From positions 62,001 to 126,000 of the IMG/VR virus record IMGVR_UViG_3300035698_035366: a stretch of DNA of 64,000 nucleotides; one strand, written 5' to 3'. Position 1 is the first letter of the stretch; every line of letters begins with the position of its first letter. Below, one piece after another: positions 8,325-35,733 of the stretch. The translations under genes were made by a program, and so were the position numbers. A model generated the notes under the pieces. The model saw nothing but the letters and a program-made list of their open reading frames with translations, ran no database searches and was not told the origin of the DNA.

Positions 8325-8910
8325 TAATACGGAATTCTTCTGGAAAATTATACTCTACAATTTTCCAATTAACCCGGGGAACCCATTCCTTCCAATCATC
8401 GGAGCGAAGTTCCAGAAAAGTTCGAAGATCAGTCGCTGCCGGAACTGGATTAGCGTTACGGTCCAAAACATGTAGGACTCGAGTAATTACATCGTCATTT
8501 ACATAATCCTGTCGGTTTTTCATACCAAACTGGTCATCGCATTTTTCTTCTGGCATAAAACGGCCTTCATACCAACGACCGTCGGCCCGGGATCCGGTAA
8601 AATAATCAGTTGGCTCGGGTAAACCAATCTTGGTTATCTTCTCCAAAATATAATCAACCCACTGGTTGGTTCCCTCAACAGTTCCAAGATCGTTTAGCTG
8701 AACGATTTTCAATCGATCACCGTACACATTTTGGACCATCTTCTTTCGTTCTTCGAACGTGTATGGATCCCACTTTTCACGGCTTTTCTGAGACGAGCCA
8801 ATGCACAGGATTGCGGTCTCATGATCCCGAATCATTTTATTGATGATCCGGCAATGCCCTTCATGTAGAGGTTGAATTCTCATTACCGCAAGTGCAATTC
8901 TTGTTACCAT
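8293..8910 (-). CDS. NMN/NaMN adenylyltransferase (NadM-like)
   Basis: RIQPLHEGH (HxGH), IGSSQKSREKWDPYTFEERKKMV. Confidence 0.85.
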   Translation of the reverse strand: MVTRIALAVMRIQPLHEGHCRIINKMIRDHETAILCIGSSQKSREKWDPYTFEERKKMVQNVYGDRLKIVQLNDLGTVEGTNQWVDYILEKITKIGLPEPTDYFTGSRADGRWYEGRFMPEEKCDDQFGMKNRQDYVNDDVITRVLHVLDRNANPVPAATDLRTFLELRSDDWKEWVPRVNWKIVEYNFPEEFRINEPKSFWAKD

Positions 8911-8922
8911 AATTTTATTCCT

Positions 8923-9390
8923 TCATCCGTCCGAAATAACCCAACCGCGCTGGATAGCCAGTTCAGCTAAATCGCTATGATTGAAAGCCAGGTTCATTTC
9001 GTCAATTTCGTCGATTGGAAATCCCCGAACTTCTGCTAAATCGTCCCCGGCCACCGCATTTACAGCTTCAATATGGGTGAGGTAAGCAATGTAGCAGGTA
9101 TTAACAACATGGCCACGCGGATCAGTTTTTGGATCCGAATGGACGTGATAAAGTTCAAGATCACCAATATGATAGTCGACGCCTGTCTCTTCTTTGAGTT
9201 CACGAACAGCACACTCTTCAGTAGTTTCGGTACCAATGTTTAGGAACCCACCAGGCATACACCACTGGCCAGGAAAAGTATCAACATCATCCCGGCGCCG
9301 ACCAAGCAACATATACATTTGCCCGTTGATGAAATAAATCGGTGCAACTGTTGATGTGTTATCACCCTTCGGATACTTATATTCAAACAT
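8923..9390 (-). CDS. Nudix hydrolase, probable ADP-ribose pyrophosphatase
   Basis: Nudix box GGFLNIGTETTEECAVRELKEETGV; DPRGHVV; LAFNH. Confidence 0.88.
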   Translation of the reverse strand: MFEYKYPKGDNTSTVAPIYFINGQMYMLLGRRRDDVDTFPGQWCMPGGFLNIGTETTEECAVRELKEETGVDYHIGDLELYHVHSDPKTDPRGHVVNTCYIAYLTHIEAVNAVAGDDLAEVRGFPIDEIDEMNLAFNHSDLAELAIQRGWVISDG

Positions 9391-9448
9391 TTTCTATTCT
9401 CCTTTTTGTGCAAACTAATTATAACACATCATTGGTGGATGTAAACCT

Positions 9449-10798
9449 TTACACCGTCACTTCCTGTTCACCGATACCAGCAACATCGAAAATTTTCTTA
9501 TACATCTCAATTGCTTCGGGTGTTCCAGTTGCCTTGTTGATGTTGTTGCTGAGTTTTACAGCGGGATTACCGTCTGCTTCAACTACTTTAATAACAACAC
9601 TGAATGGGCGGAATGCTTCTTCGAGTGTTAAATTGGTTCCGGGAACACAAAGTTCTGGATCAGGTACACAACCAATAAAATCATTCGTTAGGTTTGTTCC
9701 CCAACCATATGGTGTGGTGATTTGTTTCCGGAAATATCCCTGCAATTCAACAATGTCGGGATCATTTAGGCCATCTGAGAAAATATTCGTTTTCTTCAGA
9801 ATTTCTTCATTGTTCAAACCATTGTCACGCAACCACTCGATGAACTTTGTGGCTTCCGTGCGGGGATCGCCCGAGTCCTGACGCTGTCCTCTCCATGAGG
9901 TAACAACTTCCTGTCGAAGATCATCTGGCATACCAGCGTAAAACTGCTCGGATCCGAATGTATCAGGAAGCATGATTCGAAGACCCTTGTTAAACAGTGG
10001 GCCCCATTTCCGCAGGACATCATATTGTGCCATACGCTTCTTTTCGTAAGGGGCAATTGCCGTCATAATCATTGGAAGTTCATGGGCATTTGTACCAATT
10101 GGAACCAGGTCACCATTAAAAGCCATCCATGTATTGGAAGTGCCAACGAAACTAGCCTTCAAAACTTCCTGGCACATTTCGATAGCTTTCTTCTGCCAAA
10201 GGAAACTATGCCTGCGCCTCTGTCCAAAATCTGAAACCAATGCATCAGGAGCATTATCCCGAATATTACATAGCTTCTTGTATAGCTTATCAGTTGCGCG
10301 ACCGTACATGATGTCAATGTCTGTTGGTGACATAAGTTTCATTAGATTCCGGTAATAAAGTTCAGAAATAATGGCAAGAGCAATCGTTTCCCAATCCTTA
10401 GTCATCTGCCATGGACCGTAAAATTCAAGATTGAATTGATCACCTTCAACTGAAAGTGTGTATCCGGAAAGCTGTCTATTTTTCAAACTATCAATATAGC
10501 TTTCGGAGAACATATTCTTACCGTAAACATCCATACCACGAAGATAATAAATATCAGTCAAACGGTATTTTAGTGTTTGGACGTGGTCGAGTTGCTCACG
10601 TAATTGCTGTTCTGGGATAATTTTTGCCAACGGAATCGCCTTATTGCGATTGATTAGCTTAAACCGAACCATAACATTGTCCAGTTCATTTGCGTGGATA
10701 TACTGTCCCATCGTCAGTTTGTAAAAATCAATGTCCATAAGACTACGGACAATGTAATCCGACTGTTGATGGCGTACCTGTTGTGCGAAATCAGTCAT
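9449..10798 (-). CDS. pncB: Nicotinate phosphoribosyltransferase
   Basis: SLMDIDFYKLTM, DFGQRRRHS, GTSN, PIGTNAHE, RQDSGDP, IFSDGL, GWGTNLTND, AVKLSNN..KATG. Confidence 0.93.
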   Translation of the reverse strand: MTDFAQQVRHQQSDYIVRSLMDIDFYKLTMGQYIHANELDNVMVRFKLINRNKAIPLAKIIPEQQLREQLDHVQTLKYRLTDIYYLRGMDVYGKNMFSESYIDSLKNRQLSGYTLSVEGDQFNLEFYGPWQMTKDWETIALAIISELYYRNLMKLMSPTDIDIMYGRATDKLYKKLCNIRDNAPDALVSDFGQRRRHSFLWQKKAIEMCQEVLKASFVGTSNTWMAFNGDLVPIGTNAHELPMIMTAIAPYEKKRMAQYDVLRKWGPLFNKGLRIMLPDTFGSEQFYAGMPDDLRQEVVTSWRGQRQDSGDPRTEATKFIEWLRDNGLNNEEILKKTNIFSDGLNDPDIVELQGYFRKQITTPYGWGTNLTNDFIGCVPDPELCVPGTNLTLEEAFRPFSVVIKVVEADGNPAVKLSNNINKATGTPEAIEMYKKIFDVAGIGEQEVTV

Positions 10799-11560
10799 TT
10801 TCTTTCTCCTTAACGAGCGTCATCATAAGCATTGGCATACCATATTTTGTAGAACTACCGCCTCTATAACACCTGGAATAAACTACGTCGTAGCCATATT
10901 TTTTAGCTAGGTTGTTTACAGCGAAACGCTGTATATCAGCTGCTGGTACACTATGCTTAGAATTGCGTTTATCCCATTGTTTTTGTTTATTGTTATATTG
11001 TTCCCACCAATATTGCAAATAATCATTGTTCTCGATATTAAGTCTAGCAGCAACTACGATATTGATAATGTCAACACCGTTTTCACTGCAAATTTTGATA
11101 GTACGTTCTTGATCCTCGTCGAAATTCTTGATACCATCATAATCAGCAACTCGCACCCTGACTTTTTTAGCAAACAAGTCTTCTAAAACGTCATTAAACA
11201 TTGCACGTTTAATATGCGGCCTAGCTGCTTGATTGGATACTTTACCACAAAGTCTAGTAGCAGCATTCATCAAACTTTTATATGCCTTAAAGTTCCAGTC
11301 GACGAAATGAAGCTGATCTAGGCTTCTAAAACCCAAACCATTGATAAATTCGTTGATATGGTTTTTGAAATTTGAGGGAGTACCCCCAGGAAGTGTTACG
11401 CACACACCTGAATCGAAACCTGCGGGATAAAGCTTATTGATTATTTCTGAATATTCAGAAATCACTTCATGCTTTTTCGGACTTCCGGTTTTAGCTTTAC
11501 CATTCTTATAATTCTTCGAATGTGTTATTCTTTTTTCATCTTTTCAATTTTAGAAATCAT
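10791..11560 (-). CDS. Hypothetical in NAD operon, apparently frameshifted near the 5' end
   Basis: Strong RBS and ATG at 11560; frame continues into 10791-11465 after a 1-nt shift in an A run. Confidence 0.5.
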
Positions 11561-11615
11561 TTCTGTATCTCCTTTTAAGAATAATGAGAAGGAAAATCGC
11601 TCTCTATCACTCTTC

Positions 11616-12551
11616 TTACTGTAGTATAGCAGGCTTATACTGATTGTCAAGGCTTGCCAATTTGGCAAATCTGGACTTATCAAGCGGGTTGTCCAAATAA
11701 GCTGGATTGTAACGCTTGAACGCACTTGCTTTCATACGTTCCGTTACTATCTCTAGAACCTGTTTGGATCGTTCGTCGTTAACTTCAACATCATCTGCGA
11801 GAATTGACATGGTCATAATGTCCCATTCAAGGTAAGAGCAACCAAACTGAGCTTCATCACCATCGTCAATACCTAAACCATCAGTAGGTTTAGCTGTATA
11901 GATGTTTTCAGGAACGCCAGCAAGTCGAGCCATCACAGGAACTTCCCATGACTTCCAAAGAGATTGAATTGGGCTAAGGTCGCCGACATCGCCATGTAGT
12001 GTCCAAAAACCAGCTGTTAATTCTGAAAAATTGTCAGTTGATGCAACGAGGCCACCGCGACCATTCGCATAGTTATAAAGGGTGATCATCCGTAGTTTCG
12101 CACGAATATTACCGTTCATAATGTCTTTGCGCCGGGCCTGACCAGTAAAGTTACCGTTGAGTTTTTCACTCATAACATCGTATTCATTGCTTAGATCGAC
12201 GATGTGGCTTTCAATTCCGAGAGAATTGCAGGCTTCAATACCACGTTCAGTCTCTTCTGGATTCTGATGAATCGGCATTACAACACCAATAACCGTCCAT
12301 CGTGCTTCTTTGAACAATGCGGCTGTAAGTGCGGAATCAACTCCGCCGCTCATACCAACAACCACAGTTGCAATAGATGCTTGATGACGATACGCAATCA
12401 GTGCATCAACAATACCTTCACGCATTTCTGCAATCTGTGCTTCGGTTTTAAAGGAATTATTTTGGATTAGCTTGTTAAGCTGCTGGTCCAACCAACCTGT
12501 TAGTGGACCTTGAGTATCCTGACGGGATACTGATAGGAGTGTATTCTTCAT
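11616..12551 (-). CDS. nadE: NH3-dependent NAD+ synthetase
   Basis: VVGMSGGVDSAL, GNIRAKLRMITLY, STDNFSE..GFWTLHGD, KPTDGL..DE.QFG.SY.E.D. Confidence 0.92.
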   Translation of the reverse strand: MKNTLLSVSRQDTQGPLTGWLDQQLNKLIQNNSFKTEAQIAEMREGIVDALIAYRHQASIATVVVGMSGGVDSALTAALFKEARWTVIGVVMPIHQNPEETERGIEACNSLGIESHIVDLSNEYDVMSEKLNGNFTGQARRKDIMNGNIRAKLRMITLYNYANGRGGLVASTDNFSELTAGFWTLHGDVGDLSPIQSLWKSWEVPVMARLAGVPENIYTAKPTDGLGIDDGDEAQFGCSYLEWDIMTMSILADDVEVNDERSKQVLEIVTERMKASAFKRYNPAYLDNPLDKSRFAKLASLDNQYKPAILQ

Positions 12552-14482: not shown

Positions 14483-15118
14483 ATGTATAGACGCGGTTTA
14501 ACAGAGGTATTGAATTTCAAGCAGTCACATGCAGAAATCCTCACAGAGGATAGAGCAGATGGCGGTAAGAACCTTTATATGAAGGGGATTTTCTTGGAAG
14601 GAGATGTGCGTAATCATAACCAAAGAGTTTATCCAACTAACGAGATTAAGACGGCAGTGGAGACACTAAACGAGACAATCCGTGATGGAGAAAGCATCCT
14701 TGGTGAAGCGGATCACCCAGAAGAATTAAATATCAACCTTGACCGTGTTTCCCATGAAATTACTGAAATGTGGATGGATGGTTCCCGTGGTTGTGGTAAG
14801 CTAAAAGTGCTACCAACACCCATGGGGAACATCGTTCGAACATTATTAGAAAGCGGCGTGAAACTAGGTGTTTCAAGTCGTGGTTCAGGTAATGTAGACA
14901 ACAACGGTATGGTTTCCGAATTTGAAATTGTTACTGTCGATGTTGTGGCTAAACCAAGTGCTCCAAGTGCCTATCCTAAGGCAATTTATGAAGCATTTAA
15001 TATGCCACGTCACGGTGCAATTGTTGAAGACTTAGCCGTTGCTATGCAACACGATCCAAGAGCTCAAGCGTTTCTCGCAGAGAAACTACTAAAGTTCATG
15101 GAAAGTTTAAAAAGTTAA
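14483..15118 (+). CDS. Prohead protease (T4 gp21-like)
   Basis: YMKGIFLEGDVRNHNQRVYP, LGEADHP, LGVSSRGSG, DVVAKPSAPSAY. Confidence 0.93.
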   Translation: MYRRGLTEVLNFKQSHAEILTEDRADGGKNLYMKGIFLEGDVRNHNQRVYPTNEIKTAVETLNETIRDGESILGEADHPEELNINLDRVSHEITEMWMDGSRGCGKLKVLPTPMGNIVRTLLESGVKLGVSSRGSGNVDNNGMVSEFEIVTVDVVAKPSAPSAYPKAIYEAFNMPRHGAIVEDLAVAMQHDPRAQAFLAEKLLKFMESLKS

Positions 15119-15130
15119 AGGAGATGGTCC

Positions 15131-16378
15131 ATGGATATCATTAAAAGTCTCCTTGAAAGCGAAGGCCTAGACGATAAGTTGAAAGCCAAGCTTGAAGAGG
15201 AATGGAACGCCAAACTTGAAGAAGCCCGTGTTTCTGTTCGTGAAGAAGTTGAAGTAGACATTCGCGAAGAGTTCGCACGTCGTTTTGAGACAGACCGTGC
15301 TAAGATGGTCGAAGCAATGGATAAGTTCATGACCGATTCTATTACTAAGGAACTGGAAGAATTTCACGAGGATCGCCGTCAGGTGTTCGAAGCTCGTGCA
15401 AAGCTTGCTAAACAGATCCGAGAAAATAAGGAATCAGTTGCGAAGACATTATCTGGTGCATCCGCCGTTCTAGAACAGTTTGTTTTGGGCAAGGTTAAAG
15501 AAGAACTAGGTGAGTTCATGCAGGACAAGAAGGCACTAGCCGAACAGCGTAAAGCAATGAAGGTTAAATTGGAAGAGCAGCAGACGCAGCTTAACCAGAT
15601 TACCGCAGAGCGTATCGGTAAGCTAGAGAAGTTTATTACTCGTAAGTTGTCTGAAGAAATTCAGGAATTTGAGACTGATAAGCACGAACTAGTAGAGCAG
15701 AAAGTCCGCATGGCACGTGAAGCAAAGGCAAAACTTGATGAAACACGCAAGAACTTTGTACAGCGTTCAGCTCGTCTAGTAGAACAGACTCTAAATGAGT
15801 CACTACAAAAAGAATTTACTCGTTTCCGCGAAGATATTAAGGCAGCACGACAGAATCACTTCGGTCGTAAAATCTTTGAATCCTTTGCAGCAGAGTATAT
15901 GACATCTTATCTTTCCGAAGGTTCCGAAGTCAAGAAGTTGTCCAATATGTTGGAAGAGAGCAAGTCACAAACGGCTAAAGCTCTTAACACACTTAAAGAA
16001 CAGCAGAATGTCATCGGTGGCCTAAACCGTAAGGTTCAGGTTACAGAAGGAAATGCTAAGAGAACAAAACTCATGACAGAACTATTGTCTCCATTGTCTC
16101 GCGACAATAGAAGCATTATGGAAGAAGTGTTAAGCAACGTGAAGACTGAGCGTCTACGTGAAGCTTTCAAAAAGCACCTACCATCAGTTCTAAATGAGAA
16201 TCGCGGTGCAGCGCGTCGTAAGGAAAATCTTTCCGAAGACCGTGCGGTACCATCCAGGAGAGTTGTTGAAAAGACCGGTAACAAAAAGACTCGAGTAGTA
16301 ACCGAGAATAGACAGCTAGAACAAAGTGCAGGTGATGATAATGTCGTAAGACTTCAAAAGCTTGCCGGCATTAAATAA
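15131..16378 (+). CDS. Prohead core scaffold (T4 gp22-like)
   Basis: Coiled-coil, between protease and MCP; FGRKIFESF motif. Confidence 0.75.
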   Translation: MDIIKSLLESEGLDDKLKAKLEEEWNAKLEEARVSVREEVEVDIREEFARRFETDRAKMVEAMDKFMTDSITKELEEFHEDRRQVFEARAKLAKQIRENKESVAKTLSGASAVLEQFVLGKVKEELGEFMQDKKALAEQRKAMKVKLEEQQTQLNQITAERIGKLEKFITRKLSEEIQEFETDKHELVEQKVRMAREAKAKLDETRKNFVQRSARLVEQTLNESLQKEFTRFREDIKAARQNHFGRKIFESFAAEYMTSYLSEGSEVKKLSNMLEESKSQTAKALNTLKEQQNVIGGLNRKVQVTEGNAKRTKLMTELLSPLSRDNRSIMEEVLSNVKTERLREAFKKHLPSVLNENRGAARRKENLSEDRAVPSRRVVEKTGNKKTRVVTENRQLEQSAGDDNVVRLQKLAGIK

Positions 16379-16404
16379 ACTTATTATTAAAGGGAGAGTT
16401 TACA

Positions 16405-17640
16405 ATGACTAAACTTTTTGAATCACAGTGGAAGAAGACAAAGTCCGCTCTTTGCGAAGGCAGAGATTTAGAATTTAACCAGGATGGTTCCCGTAACGAA
16501 ACTAAGAAAGCAGTTATGGAAACAATTTTGGAAAACACACACAGAGAAATGACCCGTCTGGGTCAGATGCCTTTGATGGAAACAGCAACAGCGGGATCAT
16601 CTTCTGCTGGTAATATTGCTACTCTAAACAAGGTTATTCTACCAGTTATCCGTCGTGTTATGCCAACCGTTATTGCTAACGAAATTATTGGTGTTCAACC
16701 AATGACAGGACCAGTAGCTCAGATTCATACACTTCGCGTTCGCTACGGCGACACTGTTCCATCACTAGGTGGCGGTGTAACAGCAGGTAACGAAGCACTA
16801 TCACCATTTGATATCGCTCGTTATTACTCAGGTAATGAAGATGTAACAACTCCACTAGCTGCTCCTACAGCACGTCTAGAAGGTGTTCCAGGCAACCGCT
16901 TGAACATTGAAATCCTAAAGGAAGTTGTTGAAGCTAAGACACGTCGTCTATCCGCACGTTGGACCTTTGAGGCTCAGCAGGATGCACAGGCACAGCAGGG
17001 CATCGACATTGAAGCAGAAATTCTTGCAGCATTAGCTCAGGAAATTACCGCTGAAATTGACCAGGAAATTCTTGGTTCCCTACGTCGTCTACCAGGCGCA
17101 CCAACAATTACCTTTACACAGGGTACAGTTACAGGTACTCCAACATTCGTTGGTGACACCCACGCTGCCCTAGCAGTTCTAATCAACCAGCAGGCCAACC
17201 TAATCGCTGCACGTACACGTCGTGGCGCAGGTAACTGGGTTGTTGTTTCTCCAACTGCTCTAACCGTTCTACAGTCTGCTACAACATCAGCATTCGCACG
17301 TACAACTGAAGGTGTTTTCGAAGCACCAACAAACACAAAGTTCGTTGGTACTCTTAACTCTTCAATGCGCGTTTATGTTGATCAGTATGCAGATGATGCA
17401 ACCCCAGTCCTAGTTGGATATAAGGGTGATGGTGAAATTGATGCCGCAGCTTATTACTGCCCATATGTTCCACTAACATCTTCTGGTGTTGTTATTGATC
17501 CACAGACATTCGAGCCAGTCGTATCCTTCATGACACGTTATGGCTACCTAGAGCTAACCAACTCCGCTACCTCTCTTGGTAACGCTGCTGATTACCTAGG
17601 CCTAATCGGAATCGACACTGCAACTCTAAAGTTCCAGTAA
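16405..17640 (+). CDS. Major capsid protein (T4 gp23-like)
   Basis: IRRVMPTVIANEIIGVQPMTGP, AKTRRLSARWTFE, YCPYVPL, FMTRYG. Confidence 0.95.
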   Translation: MTKLFESQWKKTKSALCEGRDLEFNQDGSRNETKKAVMETILENTHREMTRLGQMPLMETATAGSSSAGNIATLNKVILPVIRRVMPTVIANEIIGVQPMTGPVAQIHTLRVRYGDTVPSLGGGVTAGNEALSPFDIARYYSGNEDVTTPLAAPTARLEGVPGNRLNIEILKEVVEAKTRRLSARWTFEAQQDAQAQQGIDIEAEILAALAQEITAEIDQEILGSLRRLPGAPTITFTQGTVTGTPTFVGDTHAALAVLINQQANLIAARTRRGAGNWVVVSPTALTVLQSATTSAFARTTEGVFEAPTNTKFVGTLNSSMRVYVDQYADDATPVLVGYKGDGEIDAAAYYCPYVPLTSSGVVIDPQTFEPVVSFMTRYGYLELTNSATSLGNAADYLGLIGIDTATLKFQ

Positions 17641-17667
17641 GATATACCGACGAAAGTCAAAAGAACG

Positions 17668-17696
17668 AACCCGGGGCTTTATGCCTCGGGTTTTTC
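17668..17696 (+). terminator. Intrinsic terminator after MCP
   Basis: AACCCGGGGC-TTTAT-GCCTCGGGTT followed by T run. Confidence 0.8.
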
Positions 17697-19334
17697 TTTA
17701 TTCCATACCCAAACATTATTGCCACAATCCCATATTCTATCATACCCAATTGTTTGCATATATTTCCATTCAGATAAGTCTGTTTTTGGTAATTTTTTCT
17801 TTTGATATTTATAACGTGATTCCCTGATTTCATAATTTCGTGTATATGAATATCCTGGAGATGTCATTTTTTTGAATTTGAATTTATTATGTTTGTACAC
17901 ATTACCATTACCGTATCTTAAATCAGCATATGATAATATAGTATCCGGATCATTATTCTTTATAAAATAATTTAATAACCTTGAAAATCCACCAGTAACA
18001 GTTGTTCCTTGCAAGGAAGTAAATCTAGTCAATTCCCATTCATATGATCTATCAAATCTGGATTTTGAAAATGATGCAACTGATACCAGTGAATCGTCAT
18101 ATACTAAACCAATGTTTATAAGCGAATTTATATGGCCCTGTATATGATTTTTATTATGAAATTTTTGAACATCAGAATTGGATAACTCATTTATGGAACA
18201 TTTTCTTGCCATCAATTTGTTGTTAAAAATTCCCAATTTAGCCGATATAACCGATTTAACAATATCTTGTTTTTGTTTCCATTCATCACTAAAAATTGTT
18301 ATAAGTCTGATTCCTTTATCATTACATTTTACAAATTTATCTTGATGGTATTTTGGATGTTTCGATGAACTTAATTCAGAATGCCAATACAAACCACAAT
18401 ATTCAATTGCAATATTATTATCTGGAATTAATATATCCAATTCATATGGATTAATTAATGATCTATCTCCTGACAATGCATTTACACCTAATGATTTTAC
18501 AAAATCAAATACTTCTAGTTCTTCTCTAGATTTATAAATTACAGGCGTAGGGTTGCATATTTTGCACTCGGGACGTCGACCATTATCAATATACGTGGAG
18601 AACGTATGATCACAACTTATACATTCAAAATCATAATATTTTTGATTTGAAACACCTTCATATAAATCAATTGGTGTTATAAACTTTATATTACAATTTT
18701 CTTTATAATATTCATTTAATTTTAGATATGAAATTCTTTTGAAATGCTCATTCGTATACAATTTTCTTCTAGTTGCTGCTGATTTCCTAGCTACAACTGG
18801 ATCCACCATTGGGTTTTTTTCAGTCAACCGTTTCATAACGTGGGGGAGATGGGCAGCATTTTCAACACCATATCTATCCATCATTGTTTGTTTATGTGTA
18901 GCTAGTTGTTTTTTTATATTATTCTGACTTGCGTAGAAAATCTGGTGTTGTTTTCGAGCATGTTCTGATTGCCCAGCGTTTTCTACACCATATTTTTCTA
19001 AATTTGTTTGATACCTTTTTTCATTAATTTGGTCCTTTTCTTCTTTGTTATATGATTGTTTGGACTGACTTACCTTTTCGGAGACCGTTTTTCTTGCGCA
19101 CTCGCATACACCAGTCCTACCGCAGAACTTATATCCTCTAACAATTGAATCGAATTTTTTCGTATTACCATTAACGCAAATGTTTAATCCTGGATAGATT
19201 TTATTATACACAAATTCTGCAAAAGGAGACGAGTTATCAAACGCAAGCCAATCCATTATTTCAGGATCTTTTTTCAAAAACCTTGAATAATGTTTTGGAT
19301 AATCGTCAATTGTCTTTAGTATTTTATCCCGCAT
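17679..19334 (-). CDS. Free-standing putative homing endonuclease
   Basis: Repeated xxKYGVEN, Zn-finger CxxC pairs, ELDILIP..IAIEYCGLYWH nuclease motif; very low GC. Confidence 0.7.
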   Translation of the reverse strand: MRDKILKTIDDYPKHYSRFLKKDPEIMDWLAFDNSSPFAEFVYNKIYPGLNICVNGNTKKFDSIVRGYKFCGRTGVCECARKTVSEKVSQSKQSYNKEEKDQINEKRYQTNLEKYGVENAGQSEHARKQHQIFYASQNNIKKQLATHKQTMMDRYGVENAAHLPHVMKRLTEKNPMVDPVVARKSAATRRKLYTNEHFKRISYLKLNEYYKENCNIKFITPIDLYEGVSNQKYYDFECISCDHTFSTYIDNGRRPECKICNPTPVIYKSREELEVFDFVKSLGVNALSGDRSLINPYELDILIPDNNIAIEYCGLYWHSELSSSKHPKYHQDKFVKCNDKGIRLITIFSDEWKQKQDIVKSVISAKLGIFNNKLMARKCSINELSNSDVQKFHNKNHIQGHINSLINIGLVYDDSLVSVASFSKSRFDRSYEWELTRFTSLQGTTVTGGFSRLLNYFIKNNDPDTILSYADLRYGNGNVYKHNKFKFKKMTSPGYSYTRNYEIRESRYKYQKKKLPKTDLSEWKYMQTIGYDRIWDCGNNVWVWNKEKPEA

Positions 19335-19440
19335 CGATGTGTCATCCTTTGAACCAGTTATATATTAAATATAGTGTATTTATATTAATAAATCAATAAA
19401 TAATATTGACTATTACTTGATCATTACTATAGAATATAAT

Positions 19441-19590
19441 ATGGATAATAAAAACGATAAAGAAATTAAAGTTACAATGTCAAAAACCCAAGTCTTGGCG
19501 AAGAATAGAGCATTAAGTGCTGACTGGACATTTGAAATTCTTCAAGATCTTCAAACCAATCAGGCCAATCCAAAGGAATGTTATGAGTAA
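19441..19590 (+). CDS. Array micro-ORF1 (49 aa), MCP fragment ~aa166-195 + repeat tag
   Basis: MDNKNDKEIKVTMSKTQVLAKNRALSADWTFEILQDLQTNQANPKECYE. Confidence 0.75.
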   Translation: MDNKNDKEIKVTMSKTQVLAKNRALSADWTFEILQDLQTNQANPKECYE

Positions 19591-19744
19591 TAAACCAGCA
19601 CAACCGCAAAATTGGATTTCGAATGATATTAATGTAGGACTCCATTTTCCAAGCAAGGGGATAGGAAAATTATCATTCAGGAACTCAAAAGAAATTTTAT
19701 TAAATATGACTAATAGAGCGGAACCAAAGGAATGTTATGAGTGA
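19583..19744 (+). CDS. Array micro-ORF2 (53 aa)
   Basis: MSNKPAQPQNW..NRAEPKECYE; ATG overlaps ORF1 stop. Confidence 0.7.
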   Translation: MSNKPAQPQNWISNDINVGLHFPSKGIGKLSFRNSKEILLNMTNRAEPKECYE

Positions 19745-19892
19745 CATAAAAAATAAAGAATATAACAAATTGATCTTTTCAGATATTATTAATGGTCAAA
19801 TTATGCATGAAACAAAGTTCATCAATATTAATAATTGGCAACTTCATAAATATCGAATTAATGAATGTAATCCAAAGGAATGCTATGAATAA
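19737..19892 (+). CDS. Array micro-ORF3 (51 aa)
   Basis: MSDIKNKEYNKLIF..INECNPKECYE. Confidence 0.7.
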   Translation: MSDIKNKEYNKLIFSDIINGQIMHETKFININNWQLHKYRINECNPKECYE

Positions 19893-20034
19893 AATAAAAC
19901 CATCAATCTTTAACGTTGAGGAAGAACTACGTGAAATATTAGCTGCTGAAATATCGCAGGAAATAGATCGGGAAATTATGGAAAAAATTTATAAAGAAAT
20001 GGAAAAAGCTAATCCAAAGGAGTGTTATGAGTGA
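19885..20034 (+). CDS. Array micro-ORF4 (49 aa), MCP fragment ~aa200-226 + tag
   Basis: MNKIKPSIFNVEEELREILAAEISQEIDREIMEKIYKEMEKANPKECYE. Confidence 0.72.
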   Translation: MNKIKPSIFNVEEELREILAAEISQEIDREIMEKIYKEMEKANPKECYE

Positions 20035-20197
20035 TATATATAACGAAATAGAAAATATAGTTCACGGTTTGGTGGGATATAAAGGAAAAATGAAATATGA
20101 ATCCGCCACTTTTTATTGCCCATATGTTCCATTAACATCATTTGGGGTTATAGATCAAACCGATAATTATGCTAATCCAAAGAATTGCTATGAATAA
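20027..20197 (+). CDS. Array micro-ORF5 (56 aa), MCP fragment ~aa336-366 + tag
   Basis: MSDIYNEIENIVHGLVGYKGKMKYESATFYCPYVPLTSFGVIDQTDNYANPKNCYE. Confidence 0.78.
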   Translation: MSDIYNEIENIVHGLVGYKGKMKYESATFYCPYVPLTSFGVIDQTDNYANPKNCYE

Positions 20198-20360
20198 TTC
20201 AAATAATTCAAATAATCCTAATCAGGTATTGTTACCAATAATTCGAAGAATTATGCCTAATCTAATTGCTAATGAAATTATCGGAGTTCAACCAATGACA
20301 GGGGAAACGGGGGCGATTTTCACAGGTAATAGAGCAAATCCAAAGCATTGTTATGAATAA
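20190..20360 (+). CDS. Array micro-ORF6 (56 aa), MCP fragment ~aa75-109 + tag
   Basis: MNNSNNSNNPNQVLLPIIRRIMPNLIANEIIGVQPMTGETGAIFTGNRANPKHCYE. Confidence 0.8.
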   Translation: MNNSNNSNNPNQVLLPIIRRIMPNLIANEIIGVQPMTGETGAIFTGNRANPKHCYE

Positions 20361-20511
20361 ATTTAAAAAACAGGTTGAAATTTTAGAAGAAGCACAACAC
20401 GTTTTTCTTAAATTATCACCGTGGACAAAAAACCTTAGCGAGTTGCAAATGGATATTAATTATATCCTAGATAAAGTTGAGCAATGTAACCCTAAAAATA
20501 GTTACGAATAA
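20353..20511 (+). CDS. Array micro-ORF7 (52 aa)
   Basis: MNKFKKQVEILEE..KVEQCNPKNSYE. Confidence 0.7.
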   Translation: MNKFKKQVEILEEAQHVFLKLSPWTKNLSELQMDINYILDKVEQCNPKNSYE

Positions 20512-25485: not shown

Positions 25486-27609
25486 TTAAGCGTCTGTTGC
25501 GATTATTTCATCAACAATGTTCTTTGGTACTTCTGTATATTTTTCAAGATGCATTGTAAATGTTGCGCGCCCTGAAGTCATACTCCGTAATGCAGTCATA
25601 TAGCCAAACATTTCCGAAAGTGGAACGTTTGCTTCTACAACAACTGCGCTACCACGTGCATCTTGTCCAAGAATTAATCCACGACGTCGACTAATATCAC
25701 CAATAACGTCTCCTAGGTAATCATTCGGAGTAACCACTTCAACCATCATCAATGGTTCAAGTAGAACTGGTCCGGCTTTTTTAGCAGCTTCTCGGAAGCA
25801 AGCCTTCGCCGCAATTTCGAACGCAAGAGCACTAGAATCAACATCATGATATTTTCCGTCGATTAGTGTCACTTTAAAGTCCAAAGTTGGATAACCAGCG
25901 ACAACACCGCTCTTGCCTTGTTCTCTAAAACCATCTTCAACGGCTGGGACGTATTCTCTTGGAACATTACCACCCGTAACAAGATTTTCGAACGAATAAC
26001 CAGCACCTGGTTCATTTGGACCAATTGTAACCTTAATTTCAGCAAACTGTCCTGAACCACCAGACTGCTTACGGTGAGTATAAGTATGCTCGACGTCCCT
26101 CGTTAATGTTTCACGATAAGCAACTTTTGGCTTACCGATGTTACATGCAACATCGTATTCACGCATCATGCGGTCGATAATAATGTCTAGGTGTAGTTCA
26201 CCCATACCACTAAGAATGGTTTGCCCGGACTCTTCATCGAGCTTTAGACGCAAGCTTGGATCTTCCTTGCCGAGCTTATTGAGTGCAATGCCCATCTTCT
26301 GCTGGTCAGCTTTGGTTTTTGGTTCAACCGCAATATCAATCACTGGTTCAGGAAAGATCATTCGTTCAAGCACGCATGGTTTATTAATATCACATAATGT
26401 ATCACCAGTCGTAGAGTCCTTTAGACCAACGAACGCAACAATGTCACCCGCCACCACACCGTCAATATTTTCACGACTATTGGCATGCATTTCAACGATG
26501 CGACCAAGACGTTCATTTTTTCCTCGTGTTGAATTTAGTACCGTAGTTCCGGAACTGGCTGTACCAGAATAAACACGGGCGAATGCGAGAGAACCGAATT
26601 TGTCTTCAATAATTTTGAAAACAAGCGCACTAAATGGCTCATTGTCTGAAGATTTTCGAACTCCACTAACTTCACCATCTTCATCGACTGTATTGATATT
26701 ATCAACATCGGTTGGTGCTGGCATATAATCAACGACTGCGTCAAGTAATGGCTGAACGCCTTTATTCTTGAAAGCAGAACCGCACAGGATTGGTACAAAT
26801 AACCCATTAACTGTACCCTTTCGGATGCACTTAATTAATGTATCAAAATCCAAATCACCATTTTCAAAATATGATTCCATAGCATCATCATCGGCGCCAG
26901 CAGCATCTTCGATTAGTTTTTCGCGAAGTTCTGTGATACGCTCAATAACGTCTTTATCTTCCGCAATCAAATCCATATCTGCAATTCGTTTGGAAAATTC
27001 ATCGCTGGTTACATCAACTTCATCCCATGTCGCTCCCAAATCTTCACCATGATAAAACAGTCCTTTCATAGTGACAAGGTTCACAATCCCTTCGAATTTT
27101 TCTTCAGAACCCATAGGAAGTTGTGTAATAAGCGGCGTAGCAGCAAGACGGCTTTCAATCATGTCAACACACCGCATGAAGCTGGCACCATCACGGTCCA
27201 TCTTGTTAATAAAACACATACGGGGAACGTTGTATTGATCAGCTAAACGCCAATTTGTTTCGGACTGTGGCTCAACCCCAGCAACACCGTCAAAAACAAC
27301 AACAGCACCATCAAGCACGCGAAGTGAACGATTTACCTCAATCGTGAAGTCAACGTGTCCTGGAGTATCGATAATATTGATTTGATGATCTCGCCAGAAG
27401 ACAGTAGTTGCAGCGGAGGTAATAGTAATACCACGCTCTTGCTCTTGTGCCATATAATCAGTGGTGGCGGCGCCATCATGTACTTCACCAATTTTATGGC
27501 CCTTTCCGGTGTAGTATAGAATACGTTCGGTTGTGGTGGTTTTACCTGCATCGACGTGGGCGATAATACCAATATTCCGGTACATATTCAAGGGTTTATT
27601 GCGAGCCAT
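25486..27609 (-). CDS. fusA: Elongation factor G, full length
   Basis: [64 protein letters not shown]. Confidence 0.97.
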
Positions 27610-27726: not shown

Positions 27727-28032
27727 ATGAACGAGTTAACTGTACTGCATTCAATGATCGCCATTGAAATTACTGAAAAAGAAAGAAAGTCCGATGGTGG
27801 TATCTTTCTACCAGATGCCCATGAGGTTCTTCCAATGGAGGGCGTAGTGTCTTCCCTTGGGATTGGAAGCTGGGTTGAAAATGAAAAAACTGGAACCCTT
27901 GAAAGAGATACTTTTCAGGTTAAGGTTGGTGACCACGTTATTTTCTCTCCGAACACACCAATTGAATTGGAAGTTGGTGAGAAAAAATATTATCTGCTAG
28001 AAGAAAAGAATATTATTGGAATTATTGTATGA
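27727..28032 (+). CDS. groES: Co-chaperonin GroES/Cpn10
   Basis: KSDGGIFLPD, EGVV..LG.G, VKVGDHVIF, Y.LLEEKNIIGI. Confidence 0.88.
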   Translation: MNELTVLHSMIAIEITEKERKSDGGIFLPDAHEVLPMEGVVSSLGIGSWVENEKTGTLERDTFQVKVGDHVIFSPNTPIELEVGEKKYYLLEEKNIIGIIV

Positions 28033-29292: not shown

Positions 29293-30501
29293 ATGAGAAT
29301 TGCAATGTTTGAAGATCGAACAACCGCTCACGTGGATGCCAGTACAATCGTCACGCCTGATATGCTGACGATTCGAAGAGCATTTCAGGAAGCAGGGCAT
29401 GAACTCCGTATTGTTGGTGGAACAGTCCGTGATCTTCTTCTTGGGAAAGACCCCAAGGACATCGACTTCGCAACAACGGCCACACCTGAAGAAATGAAAG
29501 AAATCTTTGAGAACAATGGTTTCTCTTGGATCCCAACAGGTGAGCAGCACGGAACGTTGACAGTTCTTGGTACCAAAGACCGTGAACCGTTTGAGGTTAC
29601 AACCCTGCGTATTGACACCAATCAAGATGGTCGTCATGCTGATGTAGAGTTCACTCGCTCATGGGAAAAAGATGCATCCCGCCGTGATCTTACCTACAAT
29701 GCAATGAGCATGGATTTTGATGGAAACGTTTTTGATTACAACGGTGGTCTCGCTGATCTACAAAGCGAAACGACGCGATTTGTTGGTTCACCCGATGAGC
29801 GTGTTCGAGAAGATTTCCTGCGTATTCTCCGCTTTTTCCGTTTCCAATCTCGTTTTGCACACGATATTCCTGATGACGAGCTTTTGGCTATCAAAAATAA
29901 CGTTGACGGCCTCCGCAATATCAGTGGAGAGCGGATGTGGATGGAGATGAGTAAAATTCTTAGTGGAAACACCGAAAAGTTGGCGGCTATCATCGACACT
30001 ATGCAAAACCTCAACGTCCTGGACGCAATTGGCTTCGCTCGAAAGGTCAATGCAAATGACGTTGAGCTAGTTCGAAAGCTTACTGATAATCCAGTTACAG
30101 TCCTTGTGGCACTGGTAAAAACGCATGATGGTTTCAACCGCCTGGCGGATAAGTGGAAGATGAGTAGTGCTGAGCGCAACCTCGGTGAGTTTATCCTTGA
30201 TAATCTTTTTGAAAACATCGGTGTTCAAGAAGCTGAAGACATGCTCACTGACAAAGTTGATCCAGCATGGATCCAAGAACTGTTTGCAGCGAAGGGGAAG
30301 CCCAATCCCGTGGCTACTTTCACTCCAACAAAATTCCCAGTGACAGGTGGAGACCTAATCGCTCAGGGTCACAAACCGGGACCAGAAATGGGCAATACGC
30401 TCAAGTTTTTGAATCAGGAATGGAAGAAGAGTCGTTTTTCTCTTTCAAAGGACGAGTTGCTTCGTTTGAGCAAACCGGCGAGCAAAACCATTCAACGGTA
30501 A
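29293..30501 (+). CDS. cca: CCA-adding enzyme / tRNA nucleotidyltransferase
   Basis: VGGTVRDLLLGKDPKDIDFAT, EVTTLRID, DASRRDLTYNAM, EDFLRILRFFRF. Confidence 0.9.
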   Translation: MRIAMFEDRTTAHVDASTIVTPDMLTIRRAFQEAGHELRIVGGTVRDLLLGKDPKDIDFATTATPEEMKEIFENNGFSWIPTGEQHGTLTVLGTKDREPFEVTTLRIDTNQDGRHADVEFTRSWEKDASRRDLTYNAMSMDFDGNVFDYNGGLADLQSETTRFVGSPDERVREDFLRILRFFRFQSRFAHDIPDDELLAIKNNVDGLRNISGERMWMEMSKILSGNTEKLAAIIDTMQNLNVLDAIGFARKVNANDVELVRKLTDNPVTVLVALVKTHDGFNRLADKWKMSSAERNLGEFILDNLFENIGVQEAEDMLTDKVDPAWIQELFAAKGKPNPVATFTPTKFPVTGGDLIAQGHKPGPEMGNTLKFLNQEWKKSRFSLSKDELLRLSKPASKTIQR

Positions 30502-34914: not shown

Positions 34915-35733
34915 TTAATAATTGACTCTTTCATAATCTTCAAACAATTTCTCTTTTGTTTTACCACATTTAGCACCTTTACTGCTATTATCATATCGAG
35001 ATAATATCTGTAAATTTGTATAATGGGAAATAATCTCAGGTGGAATGTCTTGATTGTATCCTTCAGAGATTGAAAATATATGATCGAGATACCATTCATT
35101 GCTCCGTTTATCAGCATTTGGTATATCATGAAAATGTTTATAATACTGTGAATTGGTTAATTCGCATACCGTAGCATTGTATTCGGCTTTTTTCGTATCA
35201 TAATTATACCATTTCCCGCTTTCTTTGTTAACTTGTGATATTTTTTCTATCACTTTTTCAGCTTTGAATGGATTATCAACTCCATATTTTTTCATCCATG
35301 TTTCTTTTCGTTTTTCTTGAACTTCCTTCTTACTAAAAGGAGATGTATATTTTGAATAATCTCGCTCTTTTTGTTTTATCAATTGTTCTTCTCTATCGGG
35401 ATTCTCCTTAGCGTACCAATGCCGTTCGCCCGTCCGTTCTTGATATGTTTGCATACGTAATTTTGTATGTTCGGGATCACGCGCCTTAGCACTATTTGAA
35501 CTGTATTTTGAATAGTGGCTACCCCACCATCTTACCGGAATATTATCTATGGGGCATAACTTGATTTCGTATGATTCATTGAGTATGTGCCAACAGCGTT
35601 GAGCAGGCTTAACATCTTCCGGTAAAAAATTAGTAGCTTGTATAATTTCTTCCCATAATTTGGTCTCCCGTTTTGGAAGACCTCGATAGGTGTAAATTTT
35701 GAGATATTGTTTTAATTGTTCTTTGATAGACAT
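34915..35733 (-). CDS. Putative HNH-type homing endonuclease
   Basis: KKYGVDNP repeat; WYLDHIFSI..NLQIL..DNSSK. Confidence 0.7.
   Translation of the reverse strand: MSIKEQLKQYLKIYTYRGLPKRETKLWEEIIQATNFLPEDVKPAQRCWHILNESYEIKLCPIDNIPVRWWGSHYSKYSSNSAKARDPEHTKLRMQTYQERTGERHWYAKENPDREEQLIKQKERDYSKYTSPFSKKEVQEKRKETWMKKYGVDNPFKAEKVIEKISQVNKESGKWYNYDTKKAEYNATVCELTNSQYYKHFHDIPNADKRSNEWYLDHIFSISEGYNQDIPPEIISHYTNLQILSRYDNSSKGAKCGKTKEKLFEDYERVNY

What the first reader, a model, noticed from the sequence alone, without database searches (positions are those of the whole stretch)
19564..20511. Repeat-spacer architecture: the 27-bp repeat is stop codon, RBS and next start in one
Each repeat encodes the tag, and its ATGA(G/A)T(A/G)A core gives an 8-nt stop/start overlap. 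Copies 1-4 contain an AAGGA Shine-Dalgarno in the K-E codons. The last copy has TAC instead of TAT, losing the ATG exactly where no further ORF follows. Any fragment inserted between repeats would be translated and tagged, suggesting an expandable, integron/CRISPR-like protein-coding cassette array. No integrase, Cas or RT is in the window.
Basis: partly seen in the sequence, partly recalled or inferred. Interest (0 to 1): 0.78.

Follow-up and report, generated by a model that had tools for sequence, protein, structure and literature searches.

The report
Tagged mini-genes made of virion-protein fragments
A giant salt-lake phage carries seven back-to-back mini-genes, at least five of which encode a short piece of its capsid or tail-fibre protein family, all ending in the same eight-residue tail; I found no described counterpart, but it is a fixed operon and not a CRISPR- or integron-like collecting device.

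Summary
Seven + strand mini-ORFs of 49-56 codons (19441-20511) tile the region. Each ends in (A/C)NPKxCYE. Each 27-nt repeat holds the tail codons, a Shine-Dalgarno (copies 1-4), the stop and the next ATG.

The motif occurs seven times in 64 kb against 0.02-0.15 expected. The chance that all seven frames stay open is about 1e-15. Synonymous variation in the tail points to selection on the peptide.

The bodies are not random. c1, c4, c5 and c6 are in-frame pieces of four conserved blocks of the gp23-type major capsid protein (Pfam PF07068, above threshold). c6 is the block equivalent to T4 Gol. c2 is one unit of a tail-fibre shaft repeat. c3 and c7 are orphans.

The array lies 1.8 kb downstream of the phage's own capsid gene, behind a homing endonuclease.

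It is identical in three assemblies and in contig pieces from three further runs. It is absent from 80 relatives' capsid neighbourhoods, from IMG/VR and from the metagenome contig collection. Searches of the 50,697 phage records and of the protein collection with individual cassettes found no similar free-standing mini-protein. The window has no integrase, Cas or RT, and the junctions have no hairpins.

Best reading, at low confidence: a co-translated set of structural-protein mimic peptides, each a bait with a common handle. The integron/CRISPR reading is not supported.

The parts
19406..19435 (+). Sigma-70-like promoter (TTGACT, 18 nt, TAGAAT). It ends 5 nt before the c1 ATG. c1 has no Shine-Dalgarno, so the transcript may be leaderless; this is an inference.
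19441..19590 (+). c1, 49 aa. The body matches capsid (gp23-type) profile positions 131-166, which is own-MCP residues 165-198. Tail ANPKECYE.
19583..19744 (+). c2, 53 aa. Residues 12-46 are one unit of a 57-aa tail-fibre shaft repeat (consensus GSDTNIGL..STKGTG..SFRT). Tail AEPKECYE.
19737..19892 (+). c3, 51 aa. Orphan body. Tail CNPKECYE.
19885..20034 (+). c4, 49 aa. The body matches capsid profile positions 168-197, which is own-MCP residues 200-223. In capsid coordinates this block directly follows the c1 block. Tail ANPKECYE.
20027..20197 (+). c5, 56 aa. The body matches capsid profile positions 303-335, own-MCP residues 335-363 and T4 gp23 residues 435-459. Tail ANPKNCYE.
20190..20360 (+). 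c6, 56 aa. The body matches capsid profile positions 4-39, own-MCP residues 65-109 and T4 gp23 residues 95-126. This is the most conserved gp23 block, the one equivalent to Gol. Tail ANPKHCYE.
20353..20511 (+). c7, 52 aa. Orphan helical body. Tail CNPKNSYE, with four synonymous changes and no downstream ATG.
17679..19334 (-). Free-standing homing endonuclease, 551 aa, transcribed divergently from the array. It shares the array's low GC of about 29-31%.
16405..17640 (+). The phage's own gp23-type major capsid protein gene (GC about 46%). It belongs to the family from which c1, c4, c5 and c6 derive.
17667..17693 (+). Terminator-like hairpin between the capsid gene and the endonuclease gene.

Best explanation
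The locus is a polycistronic operon of seven translationally coupled mini-genes in an uncultivated jumbo T4-like myophage of about 363 kb from salt lakes.

Each product has three parts. The first is a short Lys/Asn-rich head. The second is a body of 30-45 residues that in at least five cassettes is an in-frame copy of a conserved block of a virion structural protein: four blocks of the gp23-type capsid protein, including the Gol-equivalent block, and one unit of a tail-fibre repeat. The third is a shared C-terminal octapeptide, (A/C)NPKxCYE.

The 27-nt repeat makes the ribosome that finishes one peptide restart on the next. The set is therefore made together from one transcript, probably an early one driven by a sigma-70-type promoter.

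I infer that the peptides act as mimics of structural-protein motifs. The body would be a bait for whatever reads that motif, and the common tail a shared handle such as a partner-binding, inhibitory or turnover signal. Candidate readers are host immune sensors of the Lit or CapRel kind that recognise short capsid motifs, EF-Tu, or chaperones.

The array probably arose and was rearranged by ordinary duplication and homologous recombination between junction modules, next to a hot spot for homing-endonuclease insertion. It is now fixed.

Shown: the anatomy, the homology of five bodies, the signs of selection, the uniqueness and the fixity. Inferred: the expression timing, the bait-and-handle function and the mode of origin.
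For: Anatomy and non-randomness.

Selection on the tail peptide. The Ala codon appears as GCC, GCG, GCT and GCA. Cys is TGT or TGC, and Glu is GAA or GAG. Copy 7 needs no downstream start, yet it keeps N-P-K-N-S-Y-E through four synonymous changes.

Capsid-derived bodies. Pfam Gp23 hits are above the gathering score for c1, c4, c5 and c6. PHROG major head protein matches c1, c5 and c6 (c4 was not submitted to PHROGs). Shuffle z-scores are 7-23. A lineage-specific HMM gives the same four cassettes.

Tail-fibre origin of c2. Library-wide E-values are 1e-7 and 2e-6 to proteins built of this repeat. Carriers of the repeat hit PHROG tail-fibre families.

All identified bodies are sense and in frame.

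The cassette-versus-own-capsid comparison gives pS 0.65 (saturated) against pN 0.29. The copies are therefore old, yet about 66% of capsid-invariant residues are kept.

c6 aligns to T4 gp23 residues 95-126. That is the most conserved gp23 region, and the review PMC3014915 equates it with the EF-Tu-binding, Lit-activating Gol peptide.

Short-motif sensing of capsid proteins by Lit and CapRel, and broad immune sensing of structural proteins, are documented.

A promoter-like site lies just upstream and c1 has no Shine-Dalgarno.
Against: There is no expression data, and no RNA run was listed.

The array is known from a single phage lineage, so there is no comparative support.

The sense, in-frame orientation could result merely from a need for open frames in AT-rich DNA.

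A dN/dS below 1 is partly expected, because the capsid-gene branch is itself constrained. A third of capsid-invariant residues are replaced in the cassettes.

Free Gol peptide activates Lit rather than blocking it, so a decoy role needs non-activating variants.

No partner for the tail was identified. The neighbours p183 and p233 gave unusable models with pLDDT 34-35.

Two bodies are unexplained.
Confidence: 0.35

Rival explanations
1. Assembly poison for competitors. The peptides would be dominant-negative fragments that cap or misfold capsid and fibre subunits of co-infecting related phages. They would form, with the adjacent homing endonuclease, an interference-competition island.
For: The array is adjacent to, and shares low GC with, a homing endonuclease. 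Endonucleases of the same family sit right after the capsid gene in relatives L013, L015, L019 and L050. Related capsid-gene variants co-occur in the same samples, seen as loose ends. Intron endonucleases are known to serve in phage-phage competition (PMC11620839, listed).
Against: The bodies keep exactly the motifs that the phage's own capsid protein also has; for example ANEIIGVQPMTG is identical. A poison would therefore hit the phage itself. There is no evidence of specificity.
Confidence: 0.15
2. Non-adaptive patchwork. Repeated break repair at the endonuclease hot spot, by template switching or duplication, pasted bits of structural genes between copies of one small-gene end. The frames would stay open only because stop-free (sense) fragments are the ones that survive, or because translation must run through to downstream genes.
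For: The endonuclease hot spot lies downstream of the capsid gene. A relative, L021, also has a stray capsid block, own-MCP residues 337-368, fused into a 133-aa ORF right after its capsid gene. The array is a singleton lineage feature. A third of capsid-invariant residues are lost.
Against: The tail shows peptide-level conservation through many synonymous changes, even in the last copy. Seven perfectly tiled open frames have a chance probability of about 1e-15. Synonymous divergence from the capsid gene is saturated without ORF decay.
Confidence: 0.2
3. Tail-centred peptide family. The conserved C-terminal hepta- or octapeptide would be the active product. It could be released like the C-terminal signal peptides of arbitrium, Phr or SHP propeptides, or modified like a RiPP with a follower or recognition sequence. 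The bodies would be mere carriers.
For: There are seven precursors of about 50 aa with a conserved C-terminus and one variable position, as in families of propeptide alleles. The phage encodes an M3 oligopeptidase at 52432-54462 that acts on short peptides.
Against: The bodies have no N-terminal export signal. No TPR receptor or maturase was recognised within about 10 kb. The bodies are conserved structural-protein blocks rather than arbitrary carriers. RRNPP systems belong to Firmicutes, whereas this phage's cultivated relatives infect Gram-negative hosts.
Confidence: 0.1
4. Gene in pieces. The peptides would assemble non-covalently into a capsid-like accessory or vertex protein. This follows the T4 gene order 23 - segD - 24, in which the capsid paralogue gp24 follows a homing endonuclease (from my own knowledge of the T4 map).
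For: The position is right, after the capsid gene and an endonuclease. c1 and c4 abut exactly in capsid coordinates, at residues 198 and 200. Core-fold motifs are retained.
Against: The order is scrambled relative to the capsid protein. c2 is a tail-fibre unit, not capsid. Only about 130 of roughly 350 mature capsid residues are represented. About 40% of each peptide is head and tail.
Confidence: 0.07
5. One reading: an expandable integron- or CRISPR-like array that acquires fragments and expresses them as tagged peptides.
For: The junction design would tag any in-frame insert. The contents come from at least two gene families.
Against: No recombinase, Cas or RT was found. The junctions have no structured recombination site. 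Content is identical in every sample, with no circular or skipped forms. No other array was found anywhere. The fragments are old, with saturated synonymous sites.
Confidence: 0.05

Closest known systems
PeSL regulatory cassettes of T4-type phages (Arbiol et al. 2010, PMC2839356; Comeau et al. 2014, PMC4122927)
   Same: Both are short repeated modules that flank small accessory ORFs in a T4-like genome. Both could mediate shuffling by ordinary homologous recombination without a dedicated recombinase.
   Different: PeSLs are intergenic promoter-plus-stem-loop units. Here the module is coding (tail codons, Shine-Dalgarno, stop and start), has no stem-loop, and shows no evidence of shuffling.
Gol peptide of T4 gp23 and the Lit protease (review PMC3014915)
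   Same: c6 is a free-standing peptide that contains the same, most conserved gp23 block, aligned to T4 gp23 residues 95-126.
   Different: Gol is part of the capsid protein and is a trigger of host suicide. Here the block is encoded separately, with a tail, by the phage itself. EF-Tu binding and any effect on Lit-type sensors are untested.
Integron gene-cassette arrays
   Same: Both are tandem units bounded by a repeated element that supplies expression signals.
   Different: There is no IntI, no attC hairpins, no promoterless whole genes and no variability. The units here are about 150 nt and are gene fragments.
CRISPR arrays
   Same: Both have a repeat-spacer look, and the spacers here derive from phage structural genes.
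   Different: The repeats here are degenerate and coding. The spacers are 115-136 nt, in-frame, translated sequence only 48-70% identical to the phage's own capsid gene. There are no cas genes and no leader. The array is in a phage and matches the phage's own gene family.
Genes in pieces created by homing endonucleases (for example the split nrdA of phage Aeh1; from my own knowledge)
   Same: Both involve fragments of an essential gene expressed as separate translationally linked ORFs next to a homing endonuclease.
   Different: Those are two colinear halves of one working enzyme. Here there are seven scrambled short pieces from at least two families, all with an added common tail.
Families of small precursor peptides with a conserved recognition end (RiPP precursors; arbitrium, Phr and SHP propeptides; the insect pri/tal polycistronic smORFs with a shared heptapeptide; from my own knowledge)
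   Same: Both are several small ORFs in tandem that share a short conserved motif next to a variable part.
   Different: No maturase, receptor or export signal was found. The variable parts here are recognisable structural-protein blocks.

Membership tests
Integron cassette array | An adjacent IntI tyrosine recombinase with attI | tested here: not met
   Pfam scans of 55 ORFs of 100 aa or more in the 64-kb window found no integrase or recombinase. ORFs under 100 aa and the rest of the genome, which is outside the window, were not scanned.
Integron cassette array | attC sites: imperfect inverted repeats that fold as hairpins at cassette boundaries | tested here: not met
   There are no inverted repeats at the junctions. 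Folding z-scores of all seven junctions lie between -0.4 and +0.9.
Integron cassette array | Variable cassette content and order among carriers, and circular intermediates | tested here: not met
   The array is identical in three assemblies and in contig pieces from three further runs, with no skip or circle joints within it. All carriers are one phage population, so the test is weak.
CRISPR array | Near-identical non-coding repeats of 23-55 nt with uniform short spacers, plus cas genes | tested here: not met
   The repeats are coding and degenerate; 24 of the 27 nt fit one degenerate pattern with 0-2 mismatches per copy and five distinct tail peptides result. The spacers are 115-136 nt of open reading frame. 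No cas genes were found (Pfam calls above).
PeSL cassettes of T4-type phages | An early promoter plus a terminator stem-loop in the repeated intergenic module | tested here: not met
   The junction modules lie inside ORFs and have no stem-loop. Only one promoter-like site with a 10-of-12 consensus match lies upstream of the array; promoter-like sites in the region are no more frequent than in shuffles.
Translationally coupled operon (termination-reinitiation at overlapping stop and start) | An overlapping ATGA-type stop and start with an upstream Shine-Dalgarno in the preceding ORF | tested here: met
   There are six junctions of the form ATGA(G/A)T(A/G)A. AAGGA lies 5 nt upstream at the first four. 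Actual coupling was not measured.
Gp23 major capsid protein family (Pfam PF07068) | A profile match above the gathering score | tested here: met
   c1 scores 31.5 bits, c4 27.4, c5 37.9 and c6 45.0, against a cut-off of 24.4. Each covers only 30-36 of 376 profile positions, so these are fragments and not capsid proteins. c2, c3 and c7 do not match.
Gol peptide (Lit activator, EF-Tu ligand) | Corresponds to the conserved gp23 region that defines Gol | tested here: met
   c6 residues 14-45 align to T4 gp23 residues 95-126. The review states that Gol is the most conserved gp23 region. The exact Gol residue numbers were not available in the text I read.
Gol peptide (Lit activator, EF-Tu ligand) | Binds EF-Tu domains II and III and activates Lit | not testable with these tools
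   This needs biochemistry or co-expression.
Tail-fibre shaft repeat proteins (uncultivated viruses) | Sequence match to the 57-aa repeat unit found in proteins that hit tail-fibre families | tested here: met
   c2 residues 12-46 are 39-44% identical to repeat units of P0008 and P0009, with library-wide E-values of 1e-7 and 2e-6. Carriers of the repeat hit PHROG tail-fibre families. There is no match in cultivated phage records.
RiPP precursor family | A conserved recognition sequence plus an adjacent modifying enzyme | tested here: inconclusive
   The conserved tail is present. No maturase was recognised nearby. The neighbours p183 and p233 are of unknown function, and their models were unusable.
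RRNPP or arbitrium propeptides | An N-terminal export signal and an adjacent TPR receptor | tested here: not met
   The bodies are hydrophilic capsid or fibre blocks. No TPR protein was found in the window (Pfam calls).

The most novel reading that the evidence does not exclude
A phage-encoded library of structural-protein epitopes. It would be a single operon that co-produces short mimics of the conserved capsid and tail-fibre motifs that bacterial immune sensors read, or that EF-Tu and chaperones bind. Each mimic would be fused to a common C-terminal handle that neutralises, titrates or destroys whatever binds the bait. That would be a protein-level, multi-target decoy system, possibly extendable by recombination at its junction modules.
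Probability: 0.2. Interest if true: 0.9.

Novelty: new variant of a known kind. Interest (0 to 1): 0.66.

Why it matters
Capsid proteins and other virion proteins are now known to be major triggers of bacterial immunity. Some sensors, such as Lit and CapRel, read short capsid motifs.

A phage that separately encodes those motifs as tagged mini-proteins would be a new kind of counter-measure or host-manipulation device. It would also offer a ready-made set of natural peptide probes for motif-sensing defences and for the long-noted but unexplained binding of the Gol region to EF-Tu.

Even if it proves non-adaptive, the locus is a clear natural example of how gene fragments next to a homing-endonuclease hot spot can be turned into expressed mini-genes by a 27-nt stop-restart module.

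Tried and rejected
**Searches for other arrays**
- The tail pattern in IMG/VR and in metagenome contigs found only this phage, plus chance single hits. One recurrent single hit is an unrelated conserved gene start.
- Word-indexed protein searches with c1 and c6 returned only the query proteins themselves and frameshifted capsid genes.
- A scan of 80 relatives' capsid neighbourhoods for shared-tail ORF clusters found none.

**Origin of c2, c3 and c7**
- There was nothing in Pfam or PHROGs, in tblastn against the phage records, or in the ESM Atlas.
- There was nothing in the lineage HMMs for capsid, scaffold and protease, tried in all six frames, or in any fetched locus.
- Only the exhaustive HMMER search solved c2.

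**A mistake I corrected**
- I briefly thought a 19.8-kb contig was a circular permutation across the array. It is simply a linear contig that had been split into two loci.

**Frameshift fusion of the ORFs**
- I rejected this because the junctions contain no slippery sequence and each has its own ATG and Shine-Dalgarno. This rests on reading the sequence.

**Sortase-type NPKxx sorting signal**
- I rejected this because no hydrophobic anchor follows the motif.

**Other checks that gave nothing**
- AlphaFold models of the downstream neighbours p183 and p233 had pLDDT 34-35 and were unusable, so no fold searches were run.
- Rfam shows no RNA family in the locus.
- No RNA-seq run was listed.
- The literature searches found no described counterpart.
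Full report
**1.

Between 19441 and 20511 on the + strand, seven ORFs of 49-56 codons tile the sequence. I call them c1 to c7:
- c1 19441-19590
- c2 19583-19744
- c3 19737-19892
- c4 19885-20034
- c5 20027-20197
- c6 20190-20360
- c7 20353-20511

Each ends with a 27-nt unit that encodes (A/C)(N/E)PKx(C/S)YE plus a stop.

In copies 1-6 the Tyr-Glu-stop codons read TATGA(G/A)T(A/G)A. The next ORF therefore starts at an ATG 8 nt before the end of the previous one, and every junction shifts the frame by +1. Copies 1-4 have AAGGA 5 nt before that ATG. Copy 7 has TAC, hence no ATG, and nothing follows it.

The motif occurs seven times in the 64-kb window and only here. Chance expectation is 0.15 and 0.02 for the two patterns used. 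Shuffling each ORF gives a joint probability of about 1e-15 that all seven frames stay open in DNA with 24-34% GC. Over the array each of the six reading frames read straight through carries 18-36 stops, whereas each cassette is open in its own frame.

The junctions have no secondary structure, with z-scores from -0.4 to +0.9. They have no inverted repeats and no Rfam match.

**2. The tail is selected as a peptide**

Within the tail, Ala is written GCC, GCG, GCT and GCA. Cys is TGT or TGC, and Glu is GAA or GAG.

Copy 7 is no longer constrained to provide a Shine-Dalgarno or a start. It differs from the consensus by four synonymous changes (AAC, CCT, AAA, TAC) and only two or three replacements.

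By my count there are about 13 synonymous against 7 replacement codon differences across the seven tails. Three of the replacements fall at the one variable position. That pattern points to selection on the amino-acid sequence and not only on the ribosome-binding DNA. The count is an inference from small numbers.

**3. What the genome is**

The window belongs to an uncultivated jumbo myophage of the Rak2 / GAP32 / CBB / PA5oct / Phosso group. Three observations support this:
- The order gp21-type prohead protease, scaffold, gp23-type capsid protein at 14483-17640.
- Best DNA and protein matches to those phages.
- A capsid protein 82% identical to that of Sinorhizobium phage Phosso and about 81% identical to huge IMG/VR contigs.

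The same sequence is present in a 363-kb metagenome contig, a 296-kb IMG/VR contig and a 19.8-kb IMG/VR contig. Public runs holding it are salt-lake metagenomes.

The array lies 1.8 kb downstream of the capsid gene. In between, on the minus strand, is a 551-aa free-standing homing endonuclease (phrog_3339, E 1.6e-109). The endonuclease and the array share a GC of 28-31%, against 46% for the capsid gene.

Endonucleases of the same family sit immediately after the capsid gene, in either orientation, in four of the relatives examined: L013, L015, L019 and L050. That position is therefore an insertion hot spot. In T4 itself, segD lies between genes 23 and 24; I state this from my own knowledge.

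**4. The key finding: the bodies are pieces of virion proteins**

Four bodies hit Pfam Gp23 (PF07068) above its gathering score of 24.4 bits. Each hits a different block.

| Cassette | Profile positions | Bits | Own capsid residues |
|---|---|---|---|
| c6 | 4-39 | 45.0 | 65-109 |
| c1 | 131-166 | 31.5 | 165-198 |
| c4 | 168-197 | 27.4 | 200-223 |
| c5 | 303-335 | 37.9 | 335-363 |

Smith-Waterman scores against the phage's own capsid protein exceed all 500 shuffles, with z-scores of 7 to 23. A profile built from 83 capsid proteins (the phage's own plus 82 from this lineage) finds the same four.

Run against all 22,130 ORF segments of the window and the fetched loci, that profile finds outside true capsid genes only these cassettes and two other things. 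One is a stray fragment in relative L021. The other is a set of frameshifted capsid genes.

c1 and c4 abut exactly in capsid coordinates (residues 198 and 200) but are separated in the array by c2 and c3. The overall order is scrambled.

c6 aligns to T4 gp23 residues 95-126. This is the most conserved stretch of gp23. The T4 review PMC3014915 equates that stretch with Gol, the 29-residue peptide that binds EF-Tu and switches on the Lit protease.

c2 gave nothing in Pfam, PHROGs, the phage records or the ESM Atlas. The exhaustive HMMER search then matched it to proteins built from a 57-residue tandem repeat:
- P0008, E 1.1e-7, with five or more stretches.
- P0009, E 1.8e-6.
- P0010, which carries a baseplate N-terminal domain.

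c2 residues 12-46 are 39-44% identical to single units of that repeat. Carriers of the repeat hit PHROG tail-fibre families, and the repeat recurs in IMG/VR contigs.

c3 and c7 remain orphans.

All five identified bodies are in the sense frame. No other frame of any cassette matches anything.

**5. Age and constraint**

Codon-by-codon, the four capsid-like bodies differ from the phage's own capsid gene at 65% of synonymous sites, which is saturation. They differ at 29% of non-synonymous sites, and nucleotide identity is 48-70%. They are therefore not recent copies or assembly artefacts.

At columns invariant among the 83 capsid proteins, the cassettes keep 66% of residues. At variable columns they keep about 34%. 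They are clearly relaxed relative to a working capsid protein, but far better kept than neutral drift over a saturating distance would allow.

Two caveats apply. The capsid branch contributes to the low dN. The GC shift inflates dS.

**6. Is it mobile, expandable or shared?**

No evidence supports any of these.
- The array is 100% identical in three assemblies.
- Contig pieces from three further salt-lake runs, X3, X4 and X5, cover five of the six junctions and the array end with no differences.
- No joint internal to the array and no circular form was seen. The only joint touching the array is the c6-to-capsid-gene similarity, 35 of 38 nt.
- The degenerate tail pattern finds multi-copy matches nowhere else in IMG/VR or in the metagenome contig collection.
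- Protein searches with c1 and c6 find no other mini-protein of this kind.
- 1,153 phage records match the c6 body, at 1,156 places in all, so second copies of this block are rare; all 25 rows listed had one place, under an annotated capsid gene or an unannotated ORF at the corresponding position.
- None of 80 relatives' capsid neighbourhoods has a shared-tail ORF cluster.
- 55 ORFs of 100 aa or more in the window were scanned against Pfam. No integrase, transposase of an integrating type, Cas protein or reverse transcriptase appeared.

**7. Expression signals**

A sigma-70-type promoter match (TTGACT, 18 nt, TAGAAT; 10 of 12) ends 5 nt before the c1 ATG. Unlike its neighbours, c1 has no Shine-Dalgarno. 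A leaderless early transcript is therefore plausible, but it is inferred.

Another gene in the window, the cell-wall hydrolase, has a perfect TTGACA-17-TATAAT promoter, so the phage does use host-type promoters.

No terminator is predicted within or just after the array. No RNA run was listed.

**8. How it most likely works**

Shown: one transcript unit; six stop-restart junctions of a canonical coupling design; seven small products with a common, peptide-selected C-terminus; bodies that are old, in-frame, partly conserved copies of conserved blocks of at least two virion proteins.

Inferred: the peptides are made together and act as mimics of those blocks. Because the tail is the only thing they all share, it is most simply a common handle, and the bodies supply different specificities.

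Candidate readers of such blocks are known. Lit and CapRel detect capsid proteins through short motifs, and many Avs and Dsr sensors detect capsid, tail and fibre-associated proteins. EF-Tu binds the Gol block.

Early co-expression of non-triggering mimics could occupy or remove such readers before the real proteins appear. I rate this reading at about 0.35.

The rivals, in order of weight, are:
- a non-adaptive repair patchwork at the endonuclease hot spot (0.2);
- a dominant-negative assembly poison aimed at co-infecting relatives (0.15);
- a tail-centred signal or RiPP-like peptide family (0.1);
- a capsid paralogue in pieces (0.07);

The tail-fibre identity of c2 argues against simple fragmentation of one capsid paralogue. 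The need for open frames in AT-rich DNA may by itself explain why only sense fragments are seen.

**9. Origin**

The junction modules extend to about 45-50 nt at 60-100% identity. They fall into sub-types: the c2/c3 and c4/c5 junctions are alike, and so are the c3/c4, c5/c6 and c6/c7 junctions. This suggests duplication of units.

Recombination between such modules would keep frame and coupling while permuting cassettes. That is what was shown for PeSL modules in T4-type phages (PMC2839356, PMC4122927). It is a plausible route to the scrambled order that needs no dedicated recombinase. It remains inference.

**10. Comparison and novelty**

The locus fails the defining tests for an integron, CRISPR, PeSL or RRNPP system. 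The RiPP test was inconclusive (see the membership table).

It is a member of the general class of translationally coupled small-ORF operons in phage accessory regions. Four of its products carry fragments of the Gp23 family.

An operon of mini-proteins that each fuse a structural-protein block to one common tail has no counterpart that I could find in the literature searches or in the sequence collections.

It is so far a single-lineage oddity without expression data. I therefore file it as a new variant of a known kind with a high-novelty alternative reading, and I score interest at 0.66.

Noticed in passing
window 1043-4045 (+): The T4-type portal protein gene (1000 aa) is interrupted by an intein. 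The Intein_splicing domain spans residues 342-740, between the two portal halves. It is another selfish element in the head module.
   Followed up: no
L021 6855-7256 (-): A relative with 76% capsid identity has a 133-aa ORF right after its capsid gene. Its C-terminal 40 residues are a diverged copy of capsid block 337-368, the same block as c5, fused to an unrelated N-terminal part. Only close relatives of this ORF exist.
   Followed up: partly
L013 7372-9177; L015 7575-8783 and 8798-9973; L019 7267-8694; L050: Homing endonucleases of the same family as window 17679-19334 (28-35% identity) sit immediately downstream of the capsid gene in several relatives, in either orientation. This looks like an insertion hot spot.
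   Followed up: partly
window 25486-27609 (-), 27727-28032, 29293-30501, 44568-45068, 52432-54462: The phage encodes a full EF-G homologue, a Cpn10/GroES-like protein, a CCA-adding or poly(A) polymerase family enzyme, a Pth2 peptidyl-tRNA hydrolase and an M3 oligopeptidase. That is an unusual load of translation and peptide-turnover functions.
   Followed up: no
window 55500-59819: An ORF-poor stretch of about 2.5 kb contains a wcaG RNA motif at 56536-56651 (56 bits against a gathering score of 42). It lies just upstream of a Ro60/TROVE homologue at 58185-59819. Y-RNA-like partners might be encoded there.
   Followed up: no
window 8293-12551 (-): This is an NAD salvage and synthesis cluster: a cytidylyltransferase-like protein, a NUDIX protein, a nicotinate phosphoribosyltransferase and an NAD synthase.
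   Followed up: no
window 34915-35733 (-) and 63426-63857 (+): There are further nuclease-like accessory genes: a weak DUF7487 match and a TnsA-like endonuclease N-terminal domain.
   Followed up: no
window 39921-39941 (-): An internal DPKHTYE inside a 636-aa ORF of unknown function is the only other tail-like string in the window. It is probably chance.
   Followed up: no
L092, L093, L109, L116, L117, L150, L167 and others: Many unrelated metagenome contigs share the DNA string for NPKRCYE-stop overlapping an ATG of a gene that begins MNEAIR. This is a conserved gene-start region of some abundant organism and is unrelated to the array.
   Followed up: no
L015 10090-11958 (+): A relative has a small paralogue family of 62-168 aa ending in DAxLFKLxM downstream of two endonuclease genes. 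It is an ordinary tandem small-ORF family and useful as a contrast to the array.
   Followed up: no
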